In this document: positions 53,089-63,778 of the stretch, piece by piece
Numbering within the stretch: position 1 is the first letter of the stretch
Layout of the letters: each line of letters starts with the position of its first letter
Source: Phallusia mammillata
Taxonomy: Eukaryota
Reading direction: 5' to 3'
Length of the DNA stretch: 64,000 bases
Assembly (NCBI GenBank): GCA_965637545.1
Contig: OZ281497.1
Coordinates: forward strand, 5,890,001 to 5,954,000
Made by a program: the position numbers and the translations under genes
The notes under the pieces: generated by a model
The model's input: the letters and a program-made list of their open reading frames with translations, nothing else
The model's database searches: none
What the model was told of the DNA's origin: nothing

Positions 53089-56000
53089 TCAATATCTACT
53101 CGTAGCAAGGTACAAAGATATCAAGCTTGATATAACAGCCATTGACCATGACAAATTGAGCGAAGTGGCAGAACCTGAAAATTAAATTAGAATATAACTT
53201 ATATAATGGCAAAACAATTAGGTCACAGCAATGTATTTGTCTTACCGATGCAGATTTTTTCCACGCTGACTTCAGTGTTGGTGTGTTTGCCAATATCACC
53301 TTTCTCTATGCTTCCACCCCACGCGTATAGGAAGTAAATGCATTCGGTTAAAGGCAGATCATTGTCATCCTGGTGGTAAATGTATTTTTTCTTGTAGTTT
53401 GAATAATCAAGAGTTAACTGAACCGTTATGTATTGAGAAACCACATTGAAATGGTTGTAAACGGCCATGACTTAAGTCAACAGTGTTAAAATAATCAACT
53501 TGACTTGAGTCATAAAATGGGACAATTTTAGTGCAAAAGACAATTTTAAACAATTATTCTTGTAATTGACATACCCTATCAAAACCATTTTCTATCAATT
53601 TTCTGCGTGGTTTGTGCTATTGCAATGCCTACTAAATTGATGCCTTGTGACGTTTTTTTGTAAAATTAATCGGATCTTAAATAGACTCATGTTTTAGCAA
53701 AAACTCGACTTGACACTGATATAATTTGACTCGTCTTGTGACTCGATAAGTACCCGTTGAGAAGTAAAATTGTTTACCCAACAAAAATACTTGGCATTAT
53801 CCTCGTACCTTTGTGTCTCGAGCTCTGGAAAACGAAAACTTAAGCTTCCCATCAAGGTACCATCCTCTGGCATTGCGCAACGAGCTTTTACTGTTGTCGA
53901 GAGCGACACCTTCCGGCGTTTTCGTGACCAGCCAGCGATCAGTAAGCGTGAGTTTTCCGCTAGATGGCTCTATCCATCCAACCACAGCGTCCGATTGTTC
54001 CTGGTCAGATAATGCATTTGAATTTGCCATAGATTCAACAAATTTGAATTAGTGTTATTGGAAGTTTCACAGCAAACTTCCTTTGATTATTTTTGTTAAA
54101 ACTTGATTGATCGACCGCAAGCAAAATGCTGTTGTAAAGGCAAGGTTTCGTTTATTCACGACTTTTTAAGGAGTATGTTTTGAGGTGCTATGTTGTAGCC
54201 TATAGTGTTTCTCTGCCTAGTGCAGTGGTTCTCAACTGGTGGTCCATGGACCACTAGTGGTCCATGATGACTTTTTGGGTGGTCCACAGGACGTCCACTA
54301 AGTTTGTTGATAAACTAGAGATTATTGCATATTACATGTTAAAAGAGTATCGAAATATTAGCTGTTAATAATTGTATCTCACTTCTTGAAAATCGCTTTT
54401 AAAGAATTATGTTTCAAGCCCAAATAGTAGTTTTGTATGTGTACTTTAATCTTGCTCAAAAATAAAATGGTCCATGATATTATTTTACTTGCGCGGTGGT
54501 CCATGGCCCGAAACGAGTTGAGAACCACTGGCCTAGTGCTTTGTCAGAGACTAGACATAACACAAAGTGTTTGTTTATATGCTTTCGCTATTGCTCGCGC
54601 TCATAGAATGAAACGGCGTGGTCAATACGGTCACGTGATATACTGTTAACATAGAGATCGTTTAATGCTAGTTGTAAACACTACATAGCCTAGTCCATAT
54701 TTTGGGTATCACATTTGGCAATCAAAGCATAAAATTAACACTGGGTTCTACTAAGCCAACCATTTTTTTGTCCTCTGAAAATCCAATTCCAGCCCATTCC
54801 TCAGCTTCTACCCTGGCTTCGATGCTAAAGTGAATAAGATCGGTTGACTTTCGATATCTCCACGATGCCCTGAAATCACAGTCGCTTCCTGCACAATCTT
54901 TTGGATGCGAGAACGATCCTTTCTCTAACGTGTCTTCCTCGTTTTTCGGGTCATCTTTAACAGAAAAGAAAATTTGAGTGTTGCGGAGCTCTTATCACAG
55001 TTGTGTATAAAAATCGTCAGATTGTAAAACCTATTTCATTTACCAAACGCGTTGTAAGTTATGCTCCCTCTTTGTGATGGTTTTGTTCCGTGGTATTTCA
55101 GTTCGTGAACTCTGCAAAGCAAAAGTGAAAATCAAATTACAGCAAATTAGTTATACTGGATGTGTGGCCATTGACATGCTACAAAAGCATCTGTTTTGTA
55201 AGTGTAATTCATATGCAATGAAAACAAAATTTGCTATTCGCAAAGAGTAATGACTTTTTCGATTTTTCCTGATTTGCAAAGCATGCGTTTGATCTTACAT
55301 TTGCAATTTTGTAATCATCTTAGTCACATATGCAATAACGAGTTCTGGAAACGAGACGTAAACGTGCTCTATTTCAAATTACGACATCTTCATGTTTACA
55401 TTGTAAACTTACGACCTCTCTAAGCAGATAAGTGCCCTGTGCTTAAATAATTGATGATCTACGTTGCACGTAACCCATTTATCGTCTTTCTCTAACAAGT
55501 ACGTGATATGAAACGCACACACCTGTAGTATCCATAGTCGGATGCCTCGCACTTTTCCAGCCCACTAAATGGTCGATGGAAAAACTTGGTCGGGGTCTGC
55601 CCTCTGGCCCATATCATTTTCATGGGTTGGTCTAATAGCGGTTGGTCACTTTTGTCTTTGGTGACAAGTTTCCTAAAAAGTGAAAAGGCGTATAGAATTT
55701 GACGGGCTTATCAGCAACACATGTGTCTTCTGCATGCTGATTCACCTAGGGCTGTTATCAAAGAAATAATGATTTGAATTTTTGACATAAATTTATCAAA
55801 TAATATTTCACACAATTTCAAATAATCAAATATTTTTTTCCATGCAATAAACCTCGATGTAGGTGCAACATCAGATCATAAGAACATATAGAATAGCCAC
55901 CAAAACATTAAATGGTCAGTATTTTACAAAAATACTGTTTCGATGATAAATTTTTCTGGTGAGTTTTGTTGAGGTTTCCTTTCGTATCAAACTTTTTTTA

Positions 56001-59000
56001 GTCATATGCACGATATTGCTACCTCCAGGACGAGTTTTACAAATTAACATACAGCAGTACATCTTGTTTTTCTTATCAAATGAAGTTAGTTCACAAAACC
56101 GTTTCATGGCGTGCAGTTTTAAAAAGTCAAATTTCTTTATTATGAAAATCCGCAAAAAGAGGCAAATTGCAAATGTATAATAGGTTTTATGTCGAACCTA
56201 CCGTATGAATCGGAGATACATCATTCCATTTTCGCTCTTTGCAACGGCCGCAACCAAATCTTCGCTTCCTCCGTACCAAGCATCGTGATGAGGAGTTGAT
56301 CTGTCACGTGTGTAACTGTCCAAAACCCGATGTAGTTTGCCTTTAGCTGTAGCTGGAACCAAATAACAGATAAGGAGTGTCAATACAGTACTTGTAGGGT
56401 CACTACCTTGCAACAAGCAATATTCGATACATACACAAGAGGATATTTATCATAGCGATCAGATGTTAGTAGATATATGCTTCTGTGGTGTAAGATGAAC
56501 ATTAATTCACCACTGGGATCAGCCCTGAAGTGTCAATGCAGACCAGCAACCACGCCACACTAATATATAAAATACAGTACGCCAGGCCCATTAAAGGCAC
56601 CTTGAATGAGAGCAGTACGCCTTGAATGGACCTGGCGTTATGTGCTTCTATCGTGGGTTCGAACGCACCGCAGGCCAGATTTTTTCAACCTACGCATTGC
56701 ATCACGAATATGCTTGGAAGGCCACAATGTTTTAGTGTAACGTTGTTGCACGTAATGACTCAGATTGGTTTTAAATTAAAGGGATTTGGCATGCCAGACT
56801 GTTGATACTTGCTAATATCGTTGACCTATGTATGCTAGAATGTTTCAAAAAGGAAAATTTGTTTCAATTATGGATGACTCGAATATTTCACTTAGAAAAA
56901 AAATCTATGTCAGTTTTACCGCAATCATCTGTTTTATACACTTGTTATGAAGCATTTTGTTTATATTGCACAAATGTTTTGGTACGCAGCTTACCAAAAA
57001 TGATATCCATGCAGTCCATAGCATGTAAAACGTCATCGCCGTCCTCTTTTGGTTTTGCATCCGGTTCAGGCTCTGGACTTGGAGCAGTTTTGTCGTCATC
57101 GGCTTTGTCTTCATCCGTGTCTTTGTCTTCTTTTTCATTATTGTCATCACCTGAATCTAACCAGAGAACGAATGATTTGTTTTAATATTAGGTTCGAGTG
57201 GTGAGTTCTGTTACAGGTATTAAGGACTTTTGTGGAAATACTACATAAAACCTTAGTAAATTAATAAAAAGTTTTCTTTAACTTGAATCATATTTCCGGA
57301 TTCTACCTTTTCTGTTGAATTCACAAAAGTTATTATTGGGTTGCATTTTTTGTAAATACCGTTAGAGTATAGAGTCACAGAGGTTACGCAAAATTTTGGA
57401 AGTTTTACAATGTACGCTCTTCTTCATTTATGCTTATAGAATCTTTTAATACCGTTGGCCATTGGGCTGTAATCGAAGCTCTTTCTAGCCCACTCTCCTG
57501 CCGCTGTGGTGTTGCCCATTTTGCATAGTTTTTCAATTTCGTTAATCTGTATGAATAAATTCATTAATGGTTGGCCTGGTTATGACAGTGTTGAAAAAAT
57601 GTTGTTCCGGGTACATGTTGCATCATGATCTTTTTATGTCTAGTTAAATCTCTCCCCCAAACAATTAATTATCATTTGAAATAGGCTTTAAAATCTGGAT
57701 ATTTAAATAAAAGGGTAACTACACTCAGTCCCGATAAACAACGTACTTTTTAATTAAACTAAGTGTGCTTATTACTATTAGACACATAGATATAACAATC
57801 GGTTTTACTGTGTAAAATACTACTTTGGTGGTATGGATTTTATAAAGTTCCAAACATATTGAATTTATTTCATCACCTTATTGTCTTGTTTGTCAACAAC
57901 TGCTCGTTTTCTTCTATTTGTCCGCCGCCGGCGTCTCCGCTTTTCTTCTGAAGACGATAATATAGAACAAATATAGAAATATAAGGCTATCCAATGACGC
58001 ACGCTATTTACAGTGAGAAACAAACGCTAAAGCACCGAACAGTTGACCTTTAAAACCTTAAGCCGCTCTAGCTTTAAAAGTGTCTTTTACATTTGGCAAC
58101 TTGCTTTGTGGACAACAACTATTTTAAAGGTTTTAATTCGCATCAACAAAATCCAGTCCAAGTAAAGTATTTCACAATCCAACTATCTGCCTTCATCAGT
58201 GTTTTCTGTTTGTTCTTCTTCTTCACTTTTCTCTTCTTCTTCCTCATAAACCTCATCATTATCTTCCTCTTCTGCAGAATTATCGGGATTGTTTGCGTCT
58301 GGGTCGGATTTTGGGAGAAATGAAGTTGGAAATTTCTTGATAAAAAAGCATTAGCAAAAATTGTTACCAGATATGTAGTAAATCTCTTCCCATTAATTAA
58401 AATCTCTTTTCAAGTAAAGCAACTGCGACGATTTTTTTCATATTGTTTTTAGATATTGATGATGCTTAAAGAAGCGAAATGCACTTGTTTTTGTAAAACA
58501 CGTAAAACACAGCGGCCGATTTAGTGGTTTTCACGCTGAATTTTCTTGTTACCAGATATATATATTACACTACAATTACAAGATATATTACACTACAATT
58601 TGAAATTGGAAGTAAACTAAAGTCACATATTGAATTTGTCATGCCCCACTCGCTCCCATGGGCGCCGGAACGTAGGGGCAAGAGGGGGCACTTGACCCCC
58701 CTTGGAATGTCAGTGTACCTCAATTTAACATATTTTGCAGCAAACCTAATTAAAGTGGCAGCGCGGGGATCTGTGACATCGTTTAATGCTTTAACTTTCA
58801 GGCAACTCAATTGTGAAGTACACGATTTATGCCTTCATATGTAACAAATTCTTGATGCGGTAAAGTATGAGCCAAAATTTGCCCTCTCTTGCAAAATTTT
58901 CTGCCGGTGCCCATGCTCGCTCCAGTAACAAACAAAAAACGCAGACAATAGCATTTAAATTTATCCTTTGAATACATCATACCATCCAACTGTTATACCA

Positions 59001-62000
59001 ACGCCATTATAAAAAAACGATATGAGACAAAAACCCTATGTATGTATTTTCAACTGGGTTTTATGACTTTAAACTGTTTTTATTTGGCAATGTTTTTTTA
59101 CGGGATTCGAACCCAGGAGCACGAATCCCGATCAGGTTTTTTATGCCTGTATAATTTGGCCAAGTTGAGGGCCTTTACCTTGCAATGTTCATCCACATCA
59201 CTGGGTCTCCACCCGATCGCGCACCAAGTGTCGGTTTTTGCCCTCACTGCAATTTCGATTTCTTCTTTGTCTTTTAATATTCTCCAGAAAAGACTTCAAA
59301 GAAATGTAATGCTTTGCAGACAATAAGGATTTAAGAGTTTTCCTAATTTGCCAAGTTTGTGTTCAAGAAGCCAGTTTACATTTTTGTGTAGGTTTAAAGG
59401 AAACTTTTTAACAACCCATAAGCTGTTTTAGAGTAGCCTGAAATTAATGCGTGAACCCGAAAGTACAAATCCGAAGTTCGGCCCAAACACCTTTTTCAAA
59501 AAAATATGCGATTTAGACGCATAAAAGTGTAAAATGGTGGCACAAAAAAGTATATTGCGGCACAAGTCTGGTCAACTGTGATGTCAAACCCGAATTATGT
59601 CGTTTTTTTACTTAGGCCTAAATCGATCGCGACCCGAGAAACTCGGCCCCACTTACAACTCCTCGCTGTTTTTTTTTTTTTATTTACAAACTTTTACCTG
59701 AACTCTGGATTTTCGTAAAGCTTAATTTTGCGGAACTTCTTTTCTTCTGACTTTTTTAACTTAGCATTCGTAAGTTTTGAATCTGTCAAACAGAATATAA
59801 TTACTTCACACCTTCTAAGAGTTTTTTTTAATTGTAACACAAATACCTTGGCATCACAAAGAAATGATTAGAATTTTTATTAGTGTTATATATGAGTGTT
59901 AAAAGTAACAAGAAAAGTCAATAAAGAGTAGTTAATGAGGCCGAACCCAAAACTACAAGCCTGGAACCCAATATTTTTCAATAAATAAAGCCCAGATCAG
60001 GACCTAAATGTAAGATTTACCACGGTGGAAATACGAAATAAATGTGACTTAATACTGTTAGGTCAGGCCCGAATTAAACCCCGTTTTAAGCCCGAAGCCA
60101 ACCTAAAAAGTCCGACCAAACCTACAATTTTACATGTAACTAACTTACATTTGTCGCACTTTCGTCCTGCCCAACCCGGCTCGCAGAAACATACTTTCTT
60201 AGGATGAAACGTAGATCCGATATCAACGCATTGCCCATGGGCGCTGCAATCTGAATTGGTGTCGCATTCATTTTCATACTCACACCTTAAAACATAGGTC
60301 GAACATAAAAAGGTAAAACATCGCTTAACAAAGCCCAAATGTAAATCGTTAATATTAAAAACAATCATTCGCAAAGATACTATGTTGTTTTGCACTAAAT
60401 GAGCAAAAACTACTTTTTAAAAATTCGCACGGTGTTTTACAACAAGCATAAAGTTAGCAAACCTTTCTCCCTCAAACTTTGATGGACAAGAGCAAACCCC
60501 GCTTGTACATGTTCCGCCGTTTATGCACTTTCCTTCGAAACACTCCTCTTCTGAAAACAGATTTAAATATATTTTAATTAAAACCTGTTGGATAATATTA
60601 GGTATGTATTTTTTTGCCAAGACAATACGAGAAAACTTCAATTCTGAAGCCCGGTCGTTTGAATCATTTTTTTGCCTTGACGTAAATTTTAATTTATCGT
60701 TTTTCACGATGTAAAAAAAGTTGTGTTGGGAGATTTGTAATCGTAGTGCATTGGATGTAATTTAAATGTCGTGAACGCCAAATTCAGATGATAAAATTTT
60801 GCAAAATTTGCCTTGCAATTTATTTTCAAATTTTCTAATTGTTTTCAGACTTTCATGGAGACTTAACCACGTTAGCACAGAATCTACCAATACCTCACAA
60901 AACATACCAGTGACTTTTGCTAACAGATAGATATTGTTTTGGCATCTATGATGCATTAATATGCGTTTTGTGGAGCAGCTGTTAAAACCAAATAGACTTC
61001 CCTCGTAACCCTGGTTTATGGTCAAAACGACCATTATAAAAACATTTTGACGTTACCTGTTTCTGTTACGACAGTGACGTCAGCACACGACCAGAAGTGG
61101 TAATCGTCATCACTTTTACCATTATCTTGTGCTGCCCATTCTTTTGCTTGTCGGAGTATTCTCAGCACACAATGGTCGCAAGTAATGTTTGAGTCAATGT
61201 TGACTGTATGTGATAGTTTCCTGTGAAGGGGCATTTTCCATCGTTAGGAAAAAAACTTTTGCTGTGTATTCTTGGTAGAGCATTGTATAAACCAGTGCTC
61301 TTCAACCGGTGTGCACGGGATGCACCAAAATATGCATGGGGTGCACCAGTACTAAAAGGTATACAAGGGTGCATCACAAACTTTTTAATAAACCATTAAT
61401 ATTTGACGTTCAGAATATTAGAAAAAATATGTAGGTTTCAACTGATGTATAAATGAACCTCTGTATTTTTTTTTAAATGTTGATCTCTAAGAATTTTTGT
61501 TTCGGTATAATTGACATGATGATATAAGGGTTCATCAAACCTCAAAAGAGCACTGGTATAAACAACCTAACAGTGGTTATAGTTGATTATGTTAACGGTG
61601 AAACATTTAGCACAAAAAAACAAAAAACAAAAAAAATTGTCTGAAAAAAATTCAGGCAAATTGACAGATCCAATGCTGAATACATGACAATTTAAAATTG
61701 TCATGTAAAACTCGAAAGAAGTTTTGGTTGTATGTGAACACCTTTTTAGAAACTAACAGTTAGAACTCGTTCTTTTCGAAGATCTATTTTAGGCATACAA
61801 AAATTGCAGCACCAGAAAACATAATTTGCAAAACAGGATATTTGCCAACATACGTGGAGTCATTTTGATAAACGAAGTTAGCATCTGTCAGTTCCGTCAG
61901 TAGGTCTCCGTCCAATTTAATCAACTGAATTTTCACACCACCCTGTAAAACATTTTTATACTGTTTATGAATTCGAGAGCAACAGCCTTTGCTTAATGAC

Positions 62001-63565
62001 AGCCGTAAAAGTATAGCGATTGTAAAATGTTAGGTTGATTCTCAGTATGAATTCCACGTCTCGCAAACAACATAAGAAAACTTCACTCGATGTGAAAACT
62101 TTTATAGACATAACATTCGGGTCTCTAGTTATGTATAATGCCTTGTGATAAATACAAACCCAACGACAAATCACTTTCGCTGTTTTTTTACCTGGTTTGG
62201 ATAAGCTACATGCCATGTAACGGTAAAATCAATCCCAGCTACCAATGTTGTCATAACGCTCTTGTCTGGAAAACAGAAAATACTTTTGTTACACGTGGTG
62301 CTTTTATCATCGCTAAAATGGCTATTGGATCATCATAGGTAGTAAAGTGTGCTAAGTAGCCTATAAGCTTAACGTCTCGCAGTCTCAAAATTCAGTTTGT
62401 AAAAAAATGCACAACTTATCATGTATGGTGTTCTTGTTAGGTCTATCACATATTTGAATTGTTTTCAGGTTTGGGCTTTGGTCTACTAACTTAAGATGCG
62501 TGAAGCACCTCTTCACGAAAACAAAGCTTTGATTACATACGCGCAATACAAATCATATCCCAAAAGGCTTTGTCGAAGACATTTTAAACACTAGAACATC
62601 ACCAATTCCAAATATCCACGACTTGGTTTACCGTTTTAGCTAAACATTCCCAGTTTGAAAACAATAAAAAAAAACATTTTTTGTAGACAGTGAGTCACCG
62701 ACTATTGACAAGTTTGAATAGCTGACATAGAGTAATTAACACTAAACCGCTTAAGCATGGAAAGCGTTATTGCCGTCCATGGTTTATTCATAACTGACAC
62801 GTGCGTAAATTATCACAACATCGTCGCGCTGTTTGAAAATGTCTTTTTCGGTTTCGCAAATGCCATGCTAATGGGCAAAGCTAATAGATTTTGAGGAAAA
62901 CAAAGTGTCTTAGAAACATTACATTGGCCAGTCTATAGGGTTTATTGGTAATTTTTATAATATACATAAAATGTCATGGAAATGTTAATATTGCTAAAAT
63001 ATGCAACGTATTTTCACAACTTTTAGTTACTTTGAAATATTAAAGACACATTCAAGCATTTTTGTTAGTGCAGACTATTTCTTGGTTCAAATATTCGTGG
63101 CACATATCGAAGCAAAATCTTTTGTCACTGTTAAACTAGTATTTATTTCTTTTAAACCGTTAATACCTGAATCAAATTGCACACCACAGGGTGGGTTTGA
63201 ATTTCTGTTGTCCATGTAGTCGAACGCCATTGGTCGAGCCCGGGGAAAGGTCAAAACCACGTGACTTTTCACAAGATTGTAGGCAAGCATTGAAGTCTTG
63301 TAAACGAGAAAAATAGTAAATAGTTTAATTGTCTTACACAGTTAAAGAGCAAATGGAACCACATGGCAAAGAGATTTAAAGCTATGAATAATGTCCCAAA
63401 TTGTAGATAAATTTTCGTTTTTTTGCAGAAAAGTATTCCTATGGCAAGGAAATAATAATTCAAAGCTTCACTATAGTTAAATGTTAAATGTCATGTAAAT
63501 ATAGAACGTTAAAAACTTGTTGTCTTTAATGTACTTACCATCAGGAATATTGTATGTAGCTTCAT
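53089..63565 (-). CDS. nahoda: Nahoda-like secreted/GPI-anchored protein: signal peptide, N-terminal His (LPMO-like) domain, 2 EGF-like repeats, 2 DOMON domains; 20 exons, ~779 aa
   Basis: Exons (minus strand): 63565-63539, 63296-63167, 62265-62192, 61942-61854, 61220-61057, 60550-60463, 60285-60149, 59782-59698, 59293-59179, 58335-58191, 57947-57877, 57546-57453, 57150-56995, 56352-56202, 55672-55523, 55111-55044, 54954-54761, 54000-53809, 53369-53246, 53174-53089. They total 2340 nt, all phases join, and all introns are GT-AG except possibly intron 10. Motifs: MKLHTIFLMTSMLAYNLVKS|HVVLTFPRAR, PPCG, TWHVAYP, CDHCVLRILRQAKEW, YHFWSCADV, EGF CINGGTC..CSCPSKFEGERC and CSAHGQCVD..KKVCFCEPGWAGRKC, WCAIGWRP, AMDCMDII, DSYTRDRSTP, IWARGQ, ELKYHG, WAGIGFS, SDAVVGW, and a hydrophobic C-tail. 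The motif order matches the invertebrate Nahoda family as I remember it (no search run). Confidence 0.88.
54223..54530. mobile_element. hAT-type MITE in intron 17 of the Nahoda-like gene
   Basis: TIRs CAGTGGTTCTCAACT / AGTTGAGAACCACTG; perfect TSD GCCTAGTG; internal GGTGGTCC repeats. Confidence 0.92.
58657..58915. mobile_element. MITE with CATGGGCG termini (hAT superfamily inferred from 8-bp TSD) in intron 9 of the Nahoda-like gene
   Basis: TIRs CATGGGCGCCGG / CCGGTGCCCATG; perfect TSD CTCGCTCC. Confidence 0.9.
61293..61555. mobile_element. hAT-type MITE in intron 4 of the Nahoda-like gene
   Basis: TIRs CAGTGCTCTT / AAGAGCACTG; perfect TSD GTATAAAC; internal GGTG(T/C)AC-like repeats. Confidence 0.88.
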
Positions 63566-63778
63566 GTTTGCGATCCGGGCATAAGCACACCCGCAGAGCT
63601 TTTATCTATTAATCTAATTCAAGGAAATCCTTTGGATCAAAACACTATTTTTACTCACAAATGGGCTAAAAGTATACAGTTACGTCAAAAAAGAAACTTT
63701 CTAAATCGCGGGTCATTATTTTAGTTACACGATTAAGTATCGTGGGAGATGTTTTTTAGATGTTTATATTTTTACTAA

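What the first reader, a model, noticed from the sequence alone, without database searches (positions are those of the whole stretch)
53089..63565. GPI-anchored fusion of an LPMO-like His-first domain with two heme-type DOMON domains: a candidate self-reducing surface oxidase
Seen: the predicted signal peptide ends at VKS, leaving His as residue 1 (HVVLTFPRAR). The domain closes with C-x-x-C-x-L-R...W-S-C-A-D-V, followed by two EGF repeats and two DOMON domains. Each DOMON keeps a Met and a downstream His (AMDC...ELKYHG; KKM|EQSDAVVGW...GDIGKHT). The protein ends in a hydrophobic GPI-type tail. Established: lytic polysaccharide monooxygenases bind copper through an N-terminal His brace, and fungal LPMOs are reduced by the Met/His-ligated b-heme DOMON domain of cellobiose dehydrogenase. 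Inference: this one polypeptide joins an LPMO-like module to its own cytochrome electron relay at the cell surface. If the host is an ascidian (inferred), cellulose tunic or chitin are candidate substrates. To my knowledge this family has not been characterised biochemically this way.
Basis: partly seen in the sequence, partly recalled or inferred. Interest (0 to 1): 0.78.

Follow-up and report, generated by a model that had tools for sequence, protein, structure and literature searches.

The report
Nahoda-family LPMO-like DOMON surface protein
This is a sea-squirt copy of a little-studied invertebrate cell-surface protein (called nahoda in insects) that joins a copper-enzyme-like head to two probable heme domains, but here one of the two copper-holding histidines is replaced, so it is unlikely to be the self-powered oxidase proposed.

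Summary
A 20-exon gene on the minus strand (63565-53089) encodes a 779-aa protein. It has a signal peptide ending VKS|H, an LPMO-fold domain, two EGF repeats, two DOMON domains that each keep a Met and a His, and a GPI-type tail. RNA contigs confirm exons 1-11. The rest aligns end to end with a Clavelina protein at 50% identity.

The gene is not an orphan. It belongs to a family found across bilaterian invertebrates, whose insect members are named nahoda. A 2019 LPMO phylogeny paper already noted the LPMO_10/EGF/DOMON combination. I found no functional study.

The head domain of the ortholog models as an LPMO fold. Its best structural match is the AA15 enzyme TdAA15A (Z 12.9).

The second histidine of the copper "brace" (TdAA15A His91) is His in 134 of 136 family sequences. 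In this gene it is Asn76, in both DNA and RNA.

The protein also has no electron-generating domain, so "self-reducing" overstates what the sequence shows.

Best reading: this is a nahoda ortholog with a degenerate copper site and intact heme-type DOMONs. Heme and copper binding remain untested. An earlier scan note reports a second locus with the same architecture elsewhere in this genome; I could not examine it.

The parts
53089..63565 (-). Whole coding span: 20 exons, 2340 nt of CDS, 779 aa
63539..63565 (-). Exon 1 coding part (MKLHTIFLM). The 5' UTR extends beyond 63640.
   Evidence: RNA joint 63296|63539 in run X1
63167..63296 (-). Exon 2: end of the signal peptide, the VKS|H cleavage site, His21 (codon 63263-63261), and HVVLTFPRAR...PPCG
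   Evidence: RNA joints. The (-3,-1) rule holds in 119/119 family members.
62191..62265 (-). Exon 3: TWHVAYPNQ. Asn76 (codon AAC, 62197-62195) sits at the second brace-His position. His71 is at 62212-62210.
   Evidence: No differing letter in RNA or DNA runs.
61853..61941 (-). Exon 4: middle of the LPMO-like domain
   Evidence: RNA joints
61057..61219 (-). Exon 5: end of the LPMO-like domain, CDHC...EW...HFWSCADV. Phe149 (61096-61094) sits at the axial Tyr/Phe position.
   Evidence: Pfam LPMO_10 E 0.011 on this exon alone. Aligns to TdAA15A Tyr184.
60461..60550 (-). Exon 6: EGF repeat 1
   Evidence: Pfam EGF families; RNA joints
60149..60283 (-). Exon 7: EGF repeat 2
   Evidence: Pfam EGF_2 at 4.9e-5; RNA joints
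59698..59782 (-). Exon 8: linker and start of DOMON 1
   Evidence: RNA joints
59179..59293 (-). Exon 9: first strands of DOMON 1 (...WCAIGWRPSDVDEHC)
   Evidence: RNA joints; conserved in orthologs
58191..58335 (-). Exon 10: acidic, low-complexity insert in DOMON 1
   Evidence: RNA joints
57877..57947 (-). Exon 11: basic part of the insert, RRRRRRTNRRKR. The furin-type RRKR occupies aa 363-366 (57915-57904).
   Evidence: RNA joints. R-x-[KR]-R occurs in this insert in 111/125 family members.
57453..57546 (-). Exon 12: insert, continued
   Evidence: The loose end of the RNA contigs at 57877 matches the start at 57546
56995..57150 (-). Exon 13: end of the insert and HAMDC. Met451 (57019-57017) is the putative heme ligand of DOMON 1. 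An alternative in-frame acceptor lies at 57156.
   Evidence: Frame and splice sites. Met is invariant in 40 aligned sequences.
56202..56352 (-). Exon 14: DOMON 1 core (YTRDRSTP...)
55523..55672 (-). Exon 15: DOMON 1
55044..55111 (-). Exon 16: ELKYHG. His566 (55092-55090) is the putative second heme ligand of DOMON 1.
   Evidence: KYHG is invariant
54761..54954 (-). Exon 17: first half of DOMON 2, GIGFSEDKKM. Met646 is at 54763-54761.
   Evidence: Met is at least 90% conserved
53809..54000 (-). Exon 18: DOMON 2 core
   Evidence: Pfam DOMON at 1.2e-6
53246..53369 (-). Exon 19: end of DOMON 2, GDIGKHT. His739 is at 53285-53283.
   Evidence: His is invariant in 27 sequences. It lies 93 residues after Met646.
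53089..53174 (-). Exon 20: candidate GPI omega region (G752-S-A), hydrophobic tail, and stop codon
   Evidence: Hydropathy. No GPI predictor was available.

Best explanation
The gene is the ascidian ortholog of the bilaterian 'nahoda' family. Members are cell-surface glycoproteins. After signal-peptide removal they start with His1 of a small AA15/AA10-related LPMO-fold domain. Two EGF spacers and two cytochrome-type DOMON domains follow. In tunicates the protein ends in a GPI-type signal.

Inferred for the family: the His brace holds one copper, each DOMON holds a Met/His-ligated b heme, and the hemes pass electrons from an outside donor (ascorbate or a membrane cytochrome) towards the copper or another surface acceptor.

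Shown for this gene: the second brace histidine is Asn76.

Inferred for this gene: the canonical copper centre is crippled, and this copy is not an active LPMO. The gene is expressed, spliced and intact. I therefore think it works mainly through its DOMON hemes as a surface electron-transfer protein, with the head domain kept as a binding module or weak metal site.
For: - Orthology: the model aligns over residues 5-770 with Clavelina LOC143461130 at 50% identity. The same architecture occurs in tunicates, amphioxus, hemichordates, echinoderms, arthropods, molluscs, annelids and nematodes. Insect members are named nahoda.
- LPMO fold: the ortholog model has pLDDT 86. The top 50 Foldseek hits are all LPMOs. 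The best VIA-align match is 5MSZ, with Z 12.9, rmsd 3.0 A and 136 aligned residues starting at residue 1 of both. Pfam LPMO_10 matches 24 of 34 head domains and BIM1-like matches 19 of 34.
- Brace mapping: the family's YPH.GG His aligns to TdAA15A His91, and the F of FWSCAD aligns to Tyr184. The paper names His1, His91 and Tyr184 as the active site.
- Asn76: the position is His in 134 of 136 sequences, Asn only here, and Gln in one bug. The codon is AAC. RNA runs X1-X3 and DNA run X4 show no other letter there.
- DOMONs: the DOMON 2 model has pLDDT 91.6. It matches the DBH DOMON at Z 14.5 and CDH cytochromes at Z 13.0-13.6. Met and His are conserved in both DOMONs. DBH, which binds no heme, has Leu at the Met position. 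The Met646-His739 spacing of 93 equals that of Met286/His379 in CG8399.
- Expression: spliced contigs occur in three runs.
Against: - No metal or heme binding was measured.
- The fold models are of the Clavelina ortholog, not of this protein.
- His71, five residues before Asn76, might take over as a ligand. His1 with its amino terminus could also still bind copper weakly.
- The DOMON is closest in sequence to DBH's, which binds no heme.
- Residue-level equivalence of the conserved His with CDH His163 was only estimated from aligned ranges.
- The long intact ORF and continued expression could mean that the head domain still does the family's normal job despite the Asn.
Confidence: 0.55

Rival explanations
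1. One reading: an active copper oxidase that reduces itself through its own two heme DOMONs and attacks tunic cellulose or chitin.
For: - The domain has an LPMO fold and exposes His1.
- An axial Phe is present.
- Both DOMONs keep the Met/His pair.
- Fungal CDH cytochromes share the DOMON fold.
- The gene is expressed.
Against: - The second brace His is Asn in this gene.
- No dehydrogenase or b561 domain supplies electrons.
- The head domain is short, about 140 aa against 195 for TdAA15A.
- Two EGF repeats separate the head from the DOMONs.
- According to earlier, untested scan notes, the genome has ordinary AA15 genes elsewhere.
Confidence: 0.1
2. A metal-handling protein rather than a polysaccharide enzyme. 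The head would be a Bim1/X325-like surface copper-binding module. The DOMON hemes would act as a cupric or ferric reductase feeding uptake transporters.
For: - Pfam BIM1-like_dom matches 19 of 34 head domains and passes its cut-off in the Clavelina ortholog.
- LaX325 matches at Z 10.9.
- X325 and Bim1 proteins are GPI-anchored (my own knowledge of Labourel et al. 2020 and Garcia-Santamarina et al. 2020; I did not read these papers here).
- Animal CYBDOM DOMONs with the same Met/His pattern are proposed ferric reductases.
Against: - AA15 and AA10 enzymes match better than X325.
- Loss of the brace His would also weaken copper capture.
- No link to transporters was seen in the window.
Confidence: 0.15
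3. A non-redox matrix or adhesion protein. The DOMONs would bind sugars or other ligands without heme, and the head would be a carbohydrate-binding relic.
For: - The closest DOMON by sequence is that of DBH, which binds no heme.
- EGF repeats and a GPI tail are typical of adhesion molecules.
- This copy deviates from several invariant residues in the head: F16Y, L17M and H56N in mature numbering.
Against: - Met and His are conserved in both DOMONs across phyla. The literature reports that sugar-binding DOMONs and DBH lack them.
- His1 and His2 are more than 98% conserved in the family.
Confidence: 0.1

Closest known systems
Insect nahoda ('DOMON-like domain-containing protein nahoda') and its bilaterian orthologs
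   Same: Same order of domains: signal peptide, His1 LPMO-like head, two EGF repeats, then DOMONs with a Cys-flanked low-complexity insert that carries a furin-type motif. Identity is 30-50% over the full length.
   Different: The tunicate protein is shorter (779 aa against about 1000-1500) and ends in a GPI-type tail rather than a long C-terminal extension. This copy has Asn at the second brace His. No functional study of nahoda was found; it appears only in gene lists.
AA15 LPMO TdAA15A from Thermobia domestica (PDB 5MSZ)
   Same: It is the best structural match (Z 12.9). His1 aligns with His1. The family's second His aligns with His91 and its Phe with Tyr184.
   Different: The head is about 55 residues smaller and only 20% identical. 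It is fused to EGF and DOMON domains. This gene lacks the His91 equivalent. No activity data exist.
Fungal X325 / Bim1 LPMO-like copper proteins (LaX325, PDB 6IBH/6IBI; Pfam BIM1-like_dom)
   Same: A small LPMO-fold domain on a GPI-type anchor. Pfam BIM1-like hits occur in 19 of 34 head domains, and the structural match is Z 10.6-10.9.
   Different: These proteins are fungal and have no DOMON or EGF domains. They match less well than AA15 and AA10 enzymes.
Cytochrome (AA8) domain of cellobiose dehydrogenase and the cytochrome of CcPDH
   Same: Same DOMON fold (Z 13.0-13.6). The Met sits in the same loop, and a His lies about 93-98 residues later.
   Different: In CDH a flavin domain on the same chain supplies the electrons. 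This protein has no such domain. Sequence identity is only 10-13%.
DOMON of animal CYBDOM proteins (SDR2/FRRS1, Drosophila CG8399) and of dopamine beta-hydroxylase
   Same: The S-x-D-x-x-M motif and the 93-residue Met-His spacing match CG8399. DBH is the closest solved sequence (E 3e-11).
   Different: CYBDOMs carry a b561 membrane domain that imports electrons. DBH has Leu in place of the Met and binds no heme.

Membership tests
nahoda family (LPMO-like head, EGF, DOMON surface proteins) | Collinear full-length similarity with the same domain order | tested here: met
   Residues 5-770 align with P0003 at 50% identity. Identity to echinoderm and insect members is 31-35% over the full length. 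Pfam domains of the homologs agree.
LPMO (AA15/AA10-type copper monooxygenase) | LPMO beta-sandwich fold | tested here: met
   Tested on the Clavelina ortholog. The model has pLDDT 86. Z is 12.9 to 5MSZ, and all top Foldseek hits are LPMOs. The window protein itself was not folded.
LPMO (AA15/AA10-type copper monooxygenase) | His as residue 1 of the mature protein | tested here: inconclusive
   The VKS|H site obeys the (-3,-1) rule, as do 119 of 119 relatives. No SignalP run or N-terminal sequencing was possible.
LPMO (AA15/AA10-type copper monooxygenase) | Second histidine of the brace (TdAA15A His91) | tested here: not met
   The window protein has Asn76 there, while 134 of 136 family sequences have His.
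LPMO (AA15/AA10-type copper monooxygenase) | Axial Tyr or Phe | tested here: met
   Phe149 aligns with Tyr184. The position is Phe in 132 of 136 sequences.
LPMO (AA15/AA10-type copper monooxygenase) | Copper binding and oxidative cleavage of a polysaccharide | not testable with these tools
   Needs bench work.
Heme b DOMON / AA8-type cytochrome | DOMON fold | tested here: met
   Pfam DOMON scores 1.2e-6 on a window exon and 6.8e-45 on the ortholog. The model has pLDDT 91.6. Z is 13.0-14.5 to CDH cytochromes and DBH.
Heme b DOMON / AA8-type cytochrome | Met and His axial ligands at the CDH/CYBDOM positions | tested here: inconclusive
   Met451/His566 and Met646/His739 are present and conserved. 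The Met aligns with the Met of 6JT6 only at E 1. The His position was estimated from aligned ranges and from the 93-residue spacing.
Heme b DOMON / AA8-type cytochrome | Bound heme (Soret band, redox activity) | not testable with these tools
   Needs bench work.
GPI-anchored protein | Small omega-site residues, a polar spacer, a hydrophobic C-terminus and no cytoplasmic tail | tested here: inconclusive
   The pattern G752-S-A, then TSLNLSWS, then MAVISSLISLYLA fits. No GPI predictor was run and no PI-PLC test was possible.

The most novel reading that the evidence does not exclude
The nahoda family is the animal kingdom's built-in pairing of an AA15-like copper centre with two b-heme DOMON cytochromes on the cell surface. 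This ascidian lineage would be a natural experiment: the copper ligand was lost while both heme sites were kept. That would show the hemes have a job of their own, such as surface metal reduction or extracellular electron transfer, independent of the copper head.
Probability: 0.25. Interest if true: 0.7.

Novelty: new member of a known kind. Interest (0 to 1): 0.45.

Why it matters
What reduces animal LPMOs in vivo is not known. A conserved invertebrate surface protein that joins an LPMO-fold copper head to cytochrome-type DOMONs is an obvious candidate system, and it seems never to have been tested.

This report links the tunicate gene to the named fly gene nahoda, which is genetically tractable. 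It places the head closest to AA15 enzymes. It also shows that the copper ligand set is more than 98% conserved in the family but broken in this copy.

Because of that break, this gene is a poor choice for proving LPMO activity. It is a useful natural control for asking what the DOMON hemes do without the copper.

Tried and rejected
- A PDB sequence search with the last head-domain exon alone found nothing meaningful. The profile of 34 domains was needed.
- I could not fold or scan the window protein itself. A spliced protein has no reference, and I did not type long sequences. Orthologs from the databases were used instead.
- I looked for exon 3 of the closest relative in JGI metagenome contigs L001 and L002 (66% identical over the exon 5 region), to see whether it shares the Asn. 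No exon 3 was found in the 3.9 kb upstream.
- P0039 and P0041 come from unrelated samples, so they say nothing about a paralog in this species.
- The findings look-up by sequence was blank, which means nothing according to the operators.
- Rejected: Asn76 as an assembly error. RNA and DNA runs agree.
- Rejected: His71 as the true brace ligand. Nematodes have Arg there but keep the downstream His, and TdAA15A uses His91.
- Rejected: a DBH-like, non-heme DOMON as the default reading. DBH lacks the Met.
- The window has no N runs. No contig looked human. The single read-laying run used 5991 letters.
Full report
**Gene model.** The region holds one multi-exon gene on the minus strand. Laying contigs of four public runs on 57650-63640 gave canonical GT..AG joints in three runs of one study (X1-X3). 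One X1 contig is 2914 nt. The DNA run X4 showed none of these joints, so these contigs derive from RNA and the gene is expressed.

The joints define exons 1-11. The loose end at 57877 continues exactly into an exon that starts at 57546. I placed the remaining exons by splice sites and frame. The result is 20 exons, 2340 nt and 779 aa, from the ATG at 63565 to the stop at 53091-53089. The model aligns in one BLASTP segment (residues 5-770, 50% identity) with a 763-aa Clavelina lepadiformis protein, which validates the unsupported 3' exons.

**What the protein contains.**
- Signal peptide MKLHTIFLMTSMLAYNLVKS, followed by His21.
- A head domain of about 140 residues that ends HFWSCADV.
- Two six-Cys EGF repeats.
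- DOMON 1, interrupted by a 153-residue acidic and basic insert.
- DOMON 2.
- A C-terminus with small residues (G752-S-A), a polar spacer and a hydrophobic end, which fits a GPI signal.

On single exons Pfam gives EGF hits, DOMON at 1.2e-6, and a sub-threshold LPMO_10 hit (E 0.011) on the last head exon.

**Relatives.** A whole-library HMMER search with the last head exon found full-length relatives. Word searches seeded with two of them found about 170 proteins with the same architecture. They come from tunicates, amphioxus, a hemichordate, echinoderms, arthropods, molluscs, an annelid, a nematomorph and nematodes. Most are labelled 'uncharacterized'. Several insect entries are named 'DOMON-like domain-containing protein nahoda'.

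In the paper library, nahoda appears only in gene lists. [quoted passage not shown] So the architecture is on record, but I found no biochemical or genetic characterisation.

**The head is an LPMO-fold domain, closest to AA15.**
- Pfam LPMO_10 matches 24 of 34 head domains, and BIM1-like_dom matches 19 of 34.
- A profile of the 34 domains hits TdAA15A (5MSZ) at E 7.6e-6.
- An AlphaFold model of the Clavelina head has pLDDT 86 and pTM 0.83.
- All 50 best Foldseek matches are LPMOs.
- By VIA-align the best match is 5MSZ, with Z 12.9, rmsd 3.0 A and 136 aligned residues, starting at residue 1 of both. AA10 enzymes follow at Z about 12, and the copper protein LaX325 at Z 10.9.
- In 119 of 119 relatives the His follows a small residue at -1 and V/A/T/G/S/C at -3, at a median position of 23. 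Exposure of His1 is therefore well supported, although not proven.

**The copper site is incomplete in this gene.** In the profile alignment, the family's YPH.GG histidine pairs with TdAA15A His91, and the Phe of FWSCAD pairs with Tyr184. The paper names His1, His91 and Tyr184 as the active site.

The window protein reads TWHVAYPNQGG, so Asn76 (codon AAC) stands where the second brace histidine should be. Among 136 family sequences that position is His in 134, Gln in one stink bug, and Asn only here. The upstream His (W-H) is Arg in nematodes, so it is not the conserved ligand.

No run, RNA or DNA, shows another letter in that exon. This copy also departs from two otherwise invariant head residues (DYMDN instead of DFLDN). 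I infer that the T-shaped three-nitrogen brace cannot form as in known LPMOs.

**The DOMONs look like cytochrome-type DOMONs.**
- In 27 DOMON 2 sequences the Met of GFSxDxxM is at least 90% conserved, and a His 93 residues later is invariant.
- In 40 DOMON 1 sequences the Met of HxMDC and the His of KYHG are invariant.
- The window protein keeps all four: Met451, His566, Met646 and His739.
- The DOMON 2 model (pLDDT 91.6) matches the DBH DOMON at Z 14.5 and the heme b cytochromes of cellobiose dehydrogenase and CcPDH at Z 13.0-13.6.
- DBH, which binds no heme, has Leu at the Met position.
- A published analysis of animal CYBDOM proteins uses the same Met/His conservation to infer heme. Its Met286/His379 pair in CG8399 has the same 93-residue spacing (PMC10691727).

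This makes heme binding likely, but it does not show it.

**Mechanism.** The protein has no flavin, PQQ or b561 domain, so any electrons must come from outside. The DOMONs could relay electrons but cannot generate them. Two EGF repeats separate the head from the DOMONs, so contact within one molecule is not obvious.

For the family, a surface heme-to-copper relay is a reasonable hypothesis. For this gene, the lost ligand argues against an active LPMO. I favour a protein that works through its DOMON hemes, with a degenerate head.

**Limits.**
- The window protein itself could not be folded or scanned whole.
- An earlier scan note (s1-410948) reports another locus with the same architecture on another piece of this genome. 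I could not read it, so I cannot say whether a copy with an intact brace exists.
- I failed to find exon 3 in the closest relative's contigs.

**Verdict.** It is a new member of a catalogued but uncharacterised family, with an unusual loss of a copper ligand.

Noticed in passing
window 57904-57915 (aa 363-366), within the DOMON 1 insert (about 58335-57020): A furin-type R-x-[KR]-R motif lies in the otherwise unconserved, Cys-flanked insert of DOMON 1 in 111 of 125 family members. The insert is 35-579 aa long. This suggests proprotein-convertase cleavage just upstream of the putative heme Met, which would give a two-chain molecule.
   Followed up: partly
window about 58650-59150 and 61250-61470 (introns): Word depth in the DNA run X4 jumps from about 270 to more than 100,000, and the contigs there are short and variant. 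RNA runs also match. These are high-copy interspersed repeats inside two introns.
   Followed up: no
window 63585-63565: A six-codon upstream ORF (ATGCCCGGATCGCAAACATGA, out of frame) overlaps the main start codon in the 5' UTR.
   Followed up: no
window 57150-57156: Two in-frame acceptor AGs lie 6 nt apart (..GGTTAG|ATTCAG|GTGATG). Either could start exon 13, differing by two residues. RNA evidence was not available for this junction.
   Followed up: no
L001:3965-10374 and L002:2843-3293: Two JGI metagenome contigs carry the gene of a close relative of the window species (66% identical over the exon 5 region). They are probably host DNA in an ascidian-associated sample.
   Followed up: partly
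P0057 (Halyomorpha halys, aa about 70-80): This is the only other family member without the second brace His (TWHIAYPQKGG). It also keeps the Met and His of both DOMONs.
   Followed up: partly
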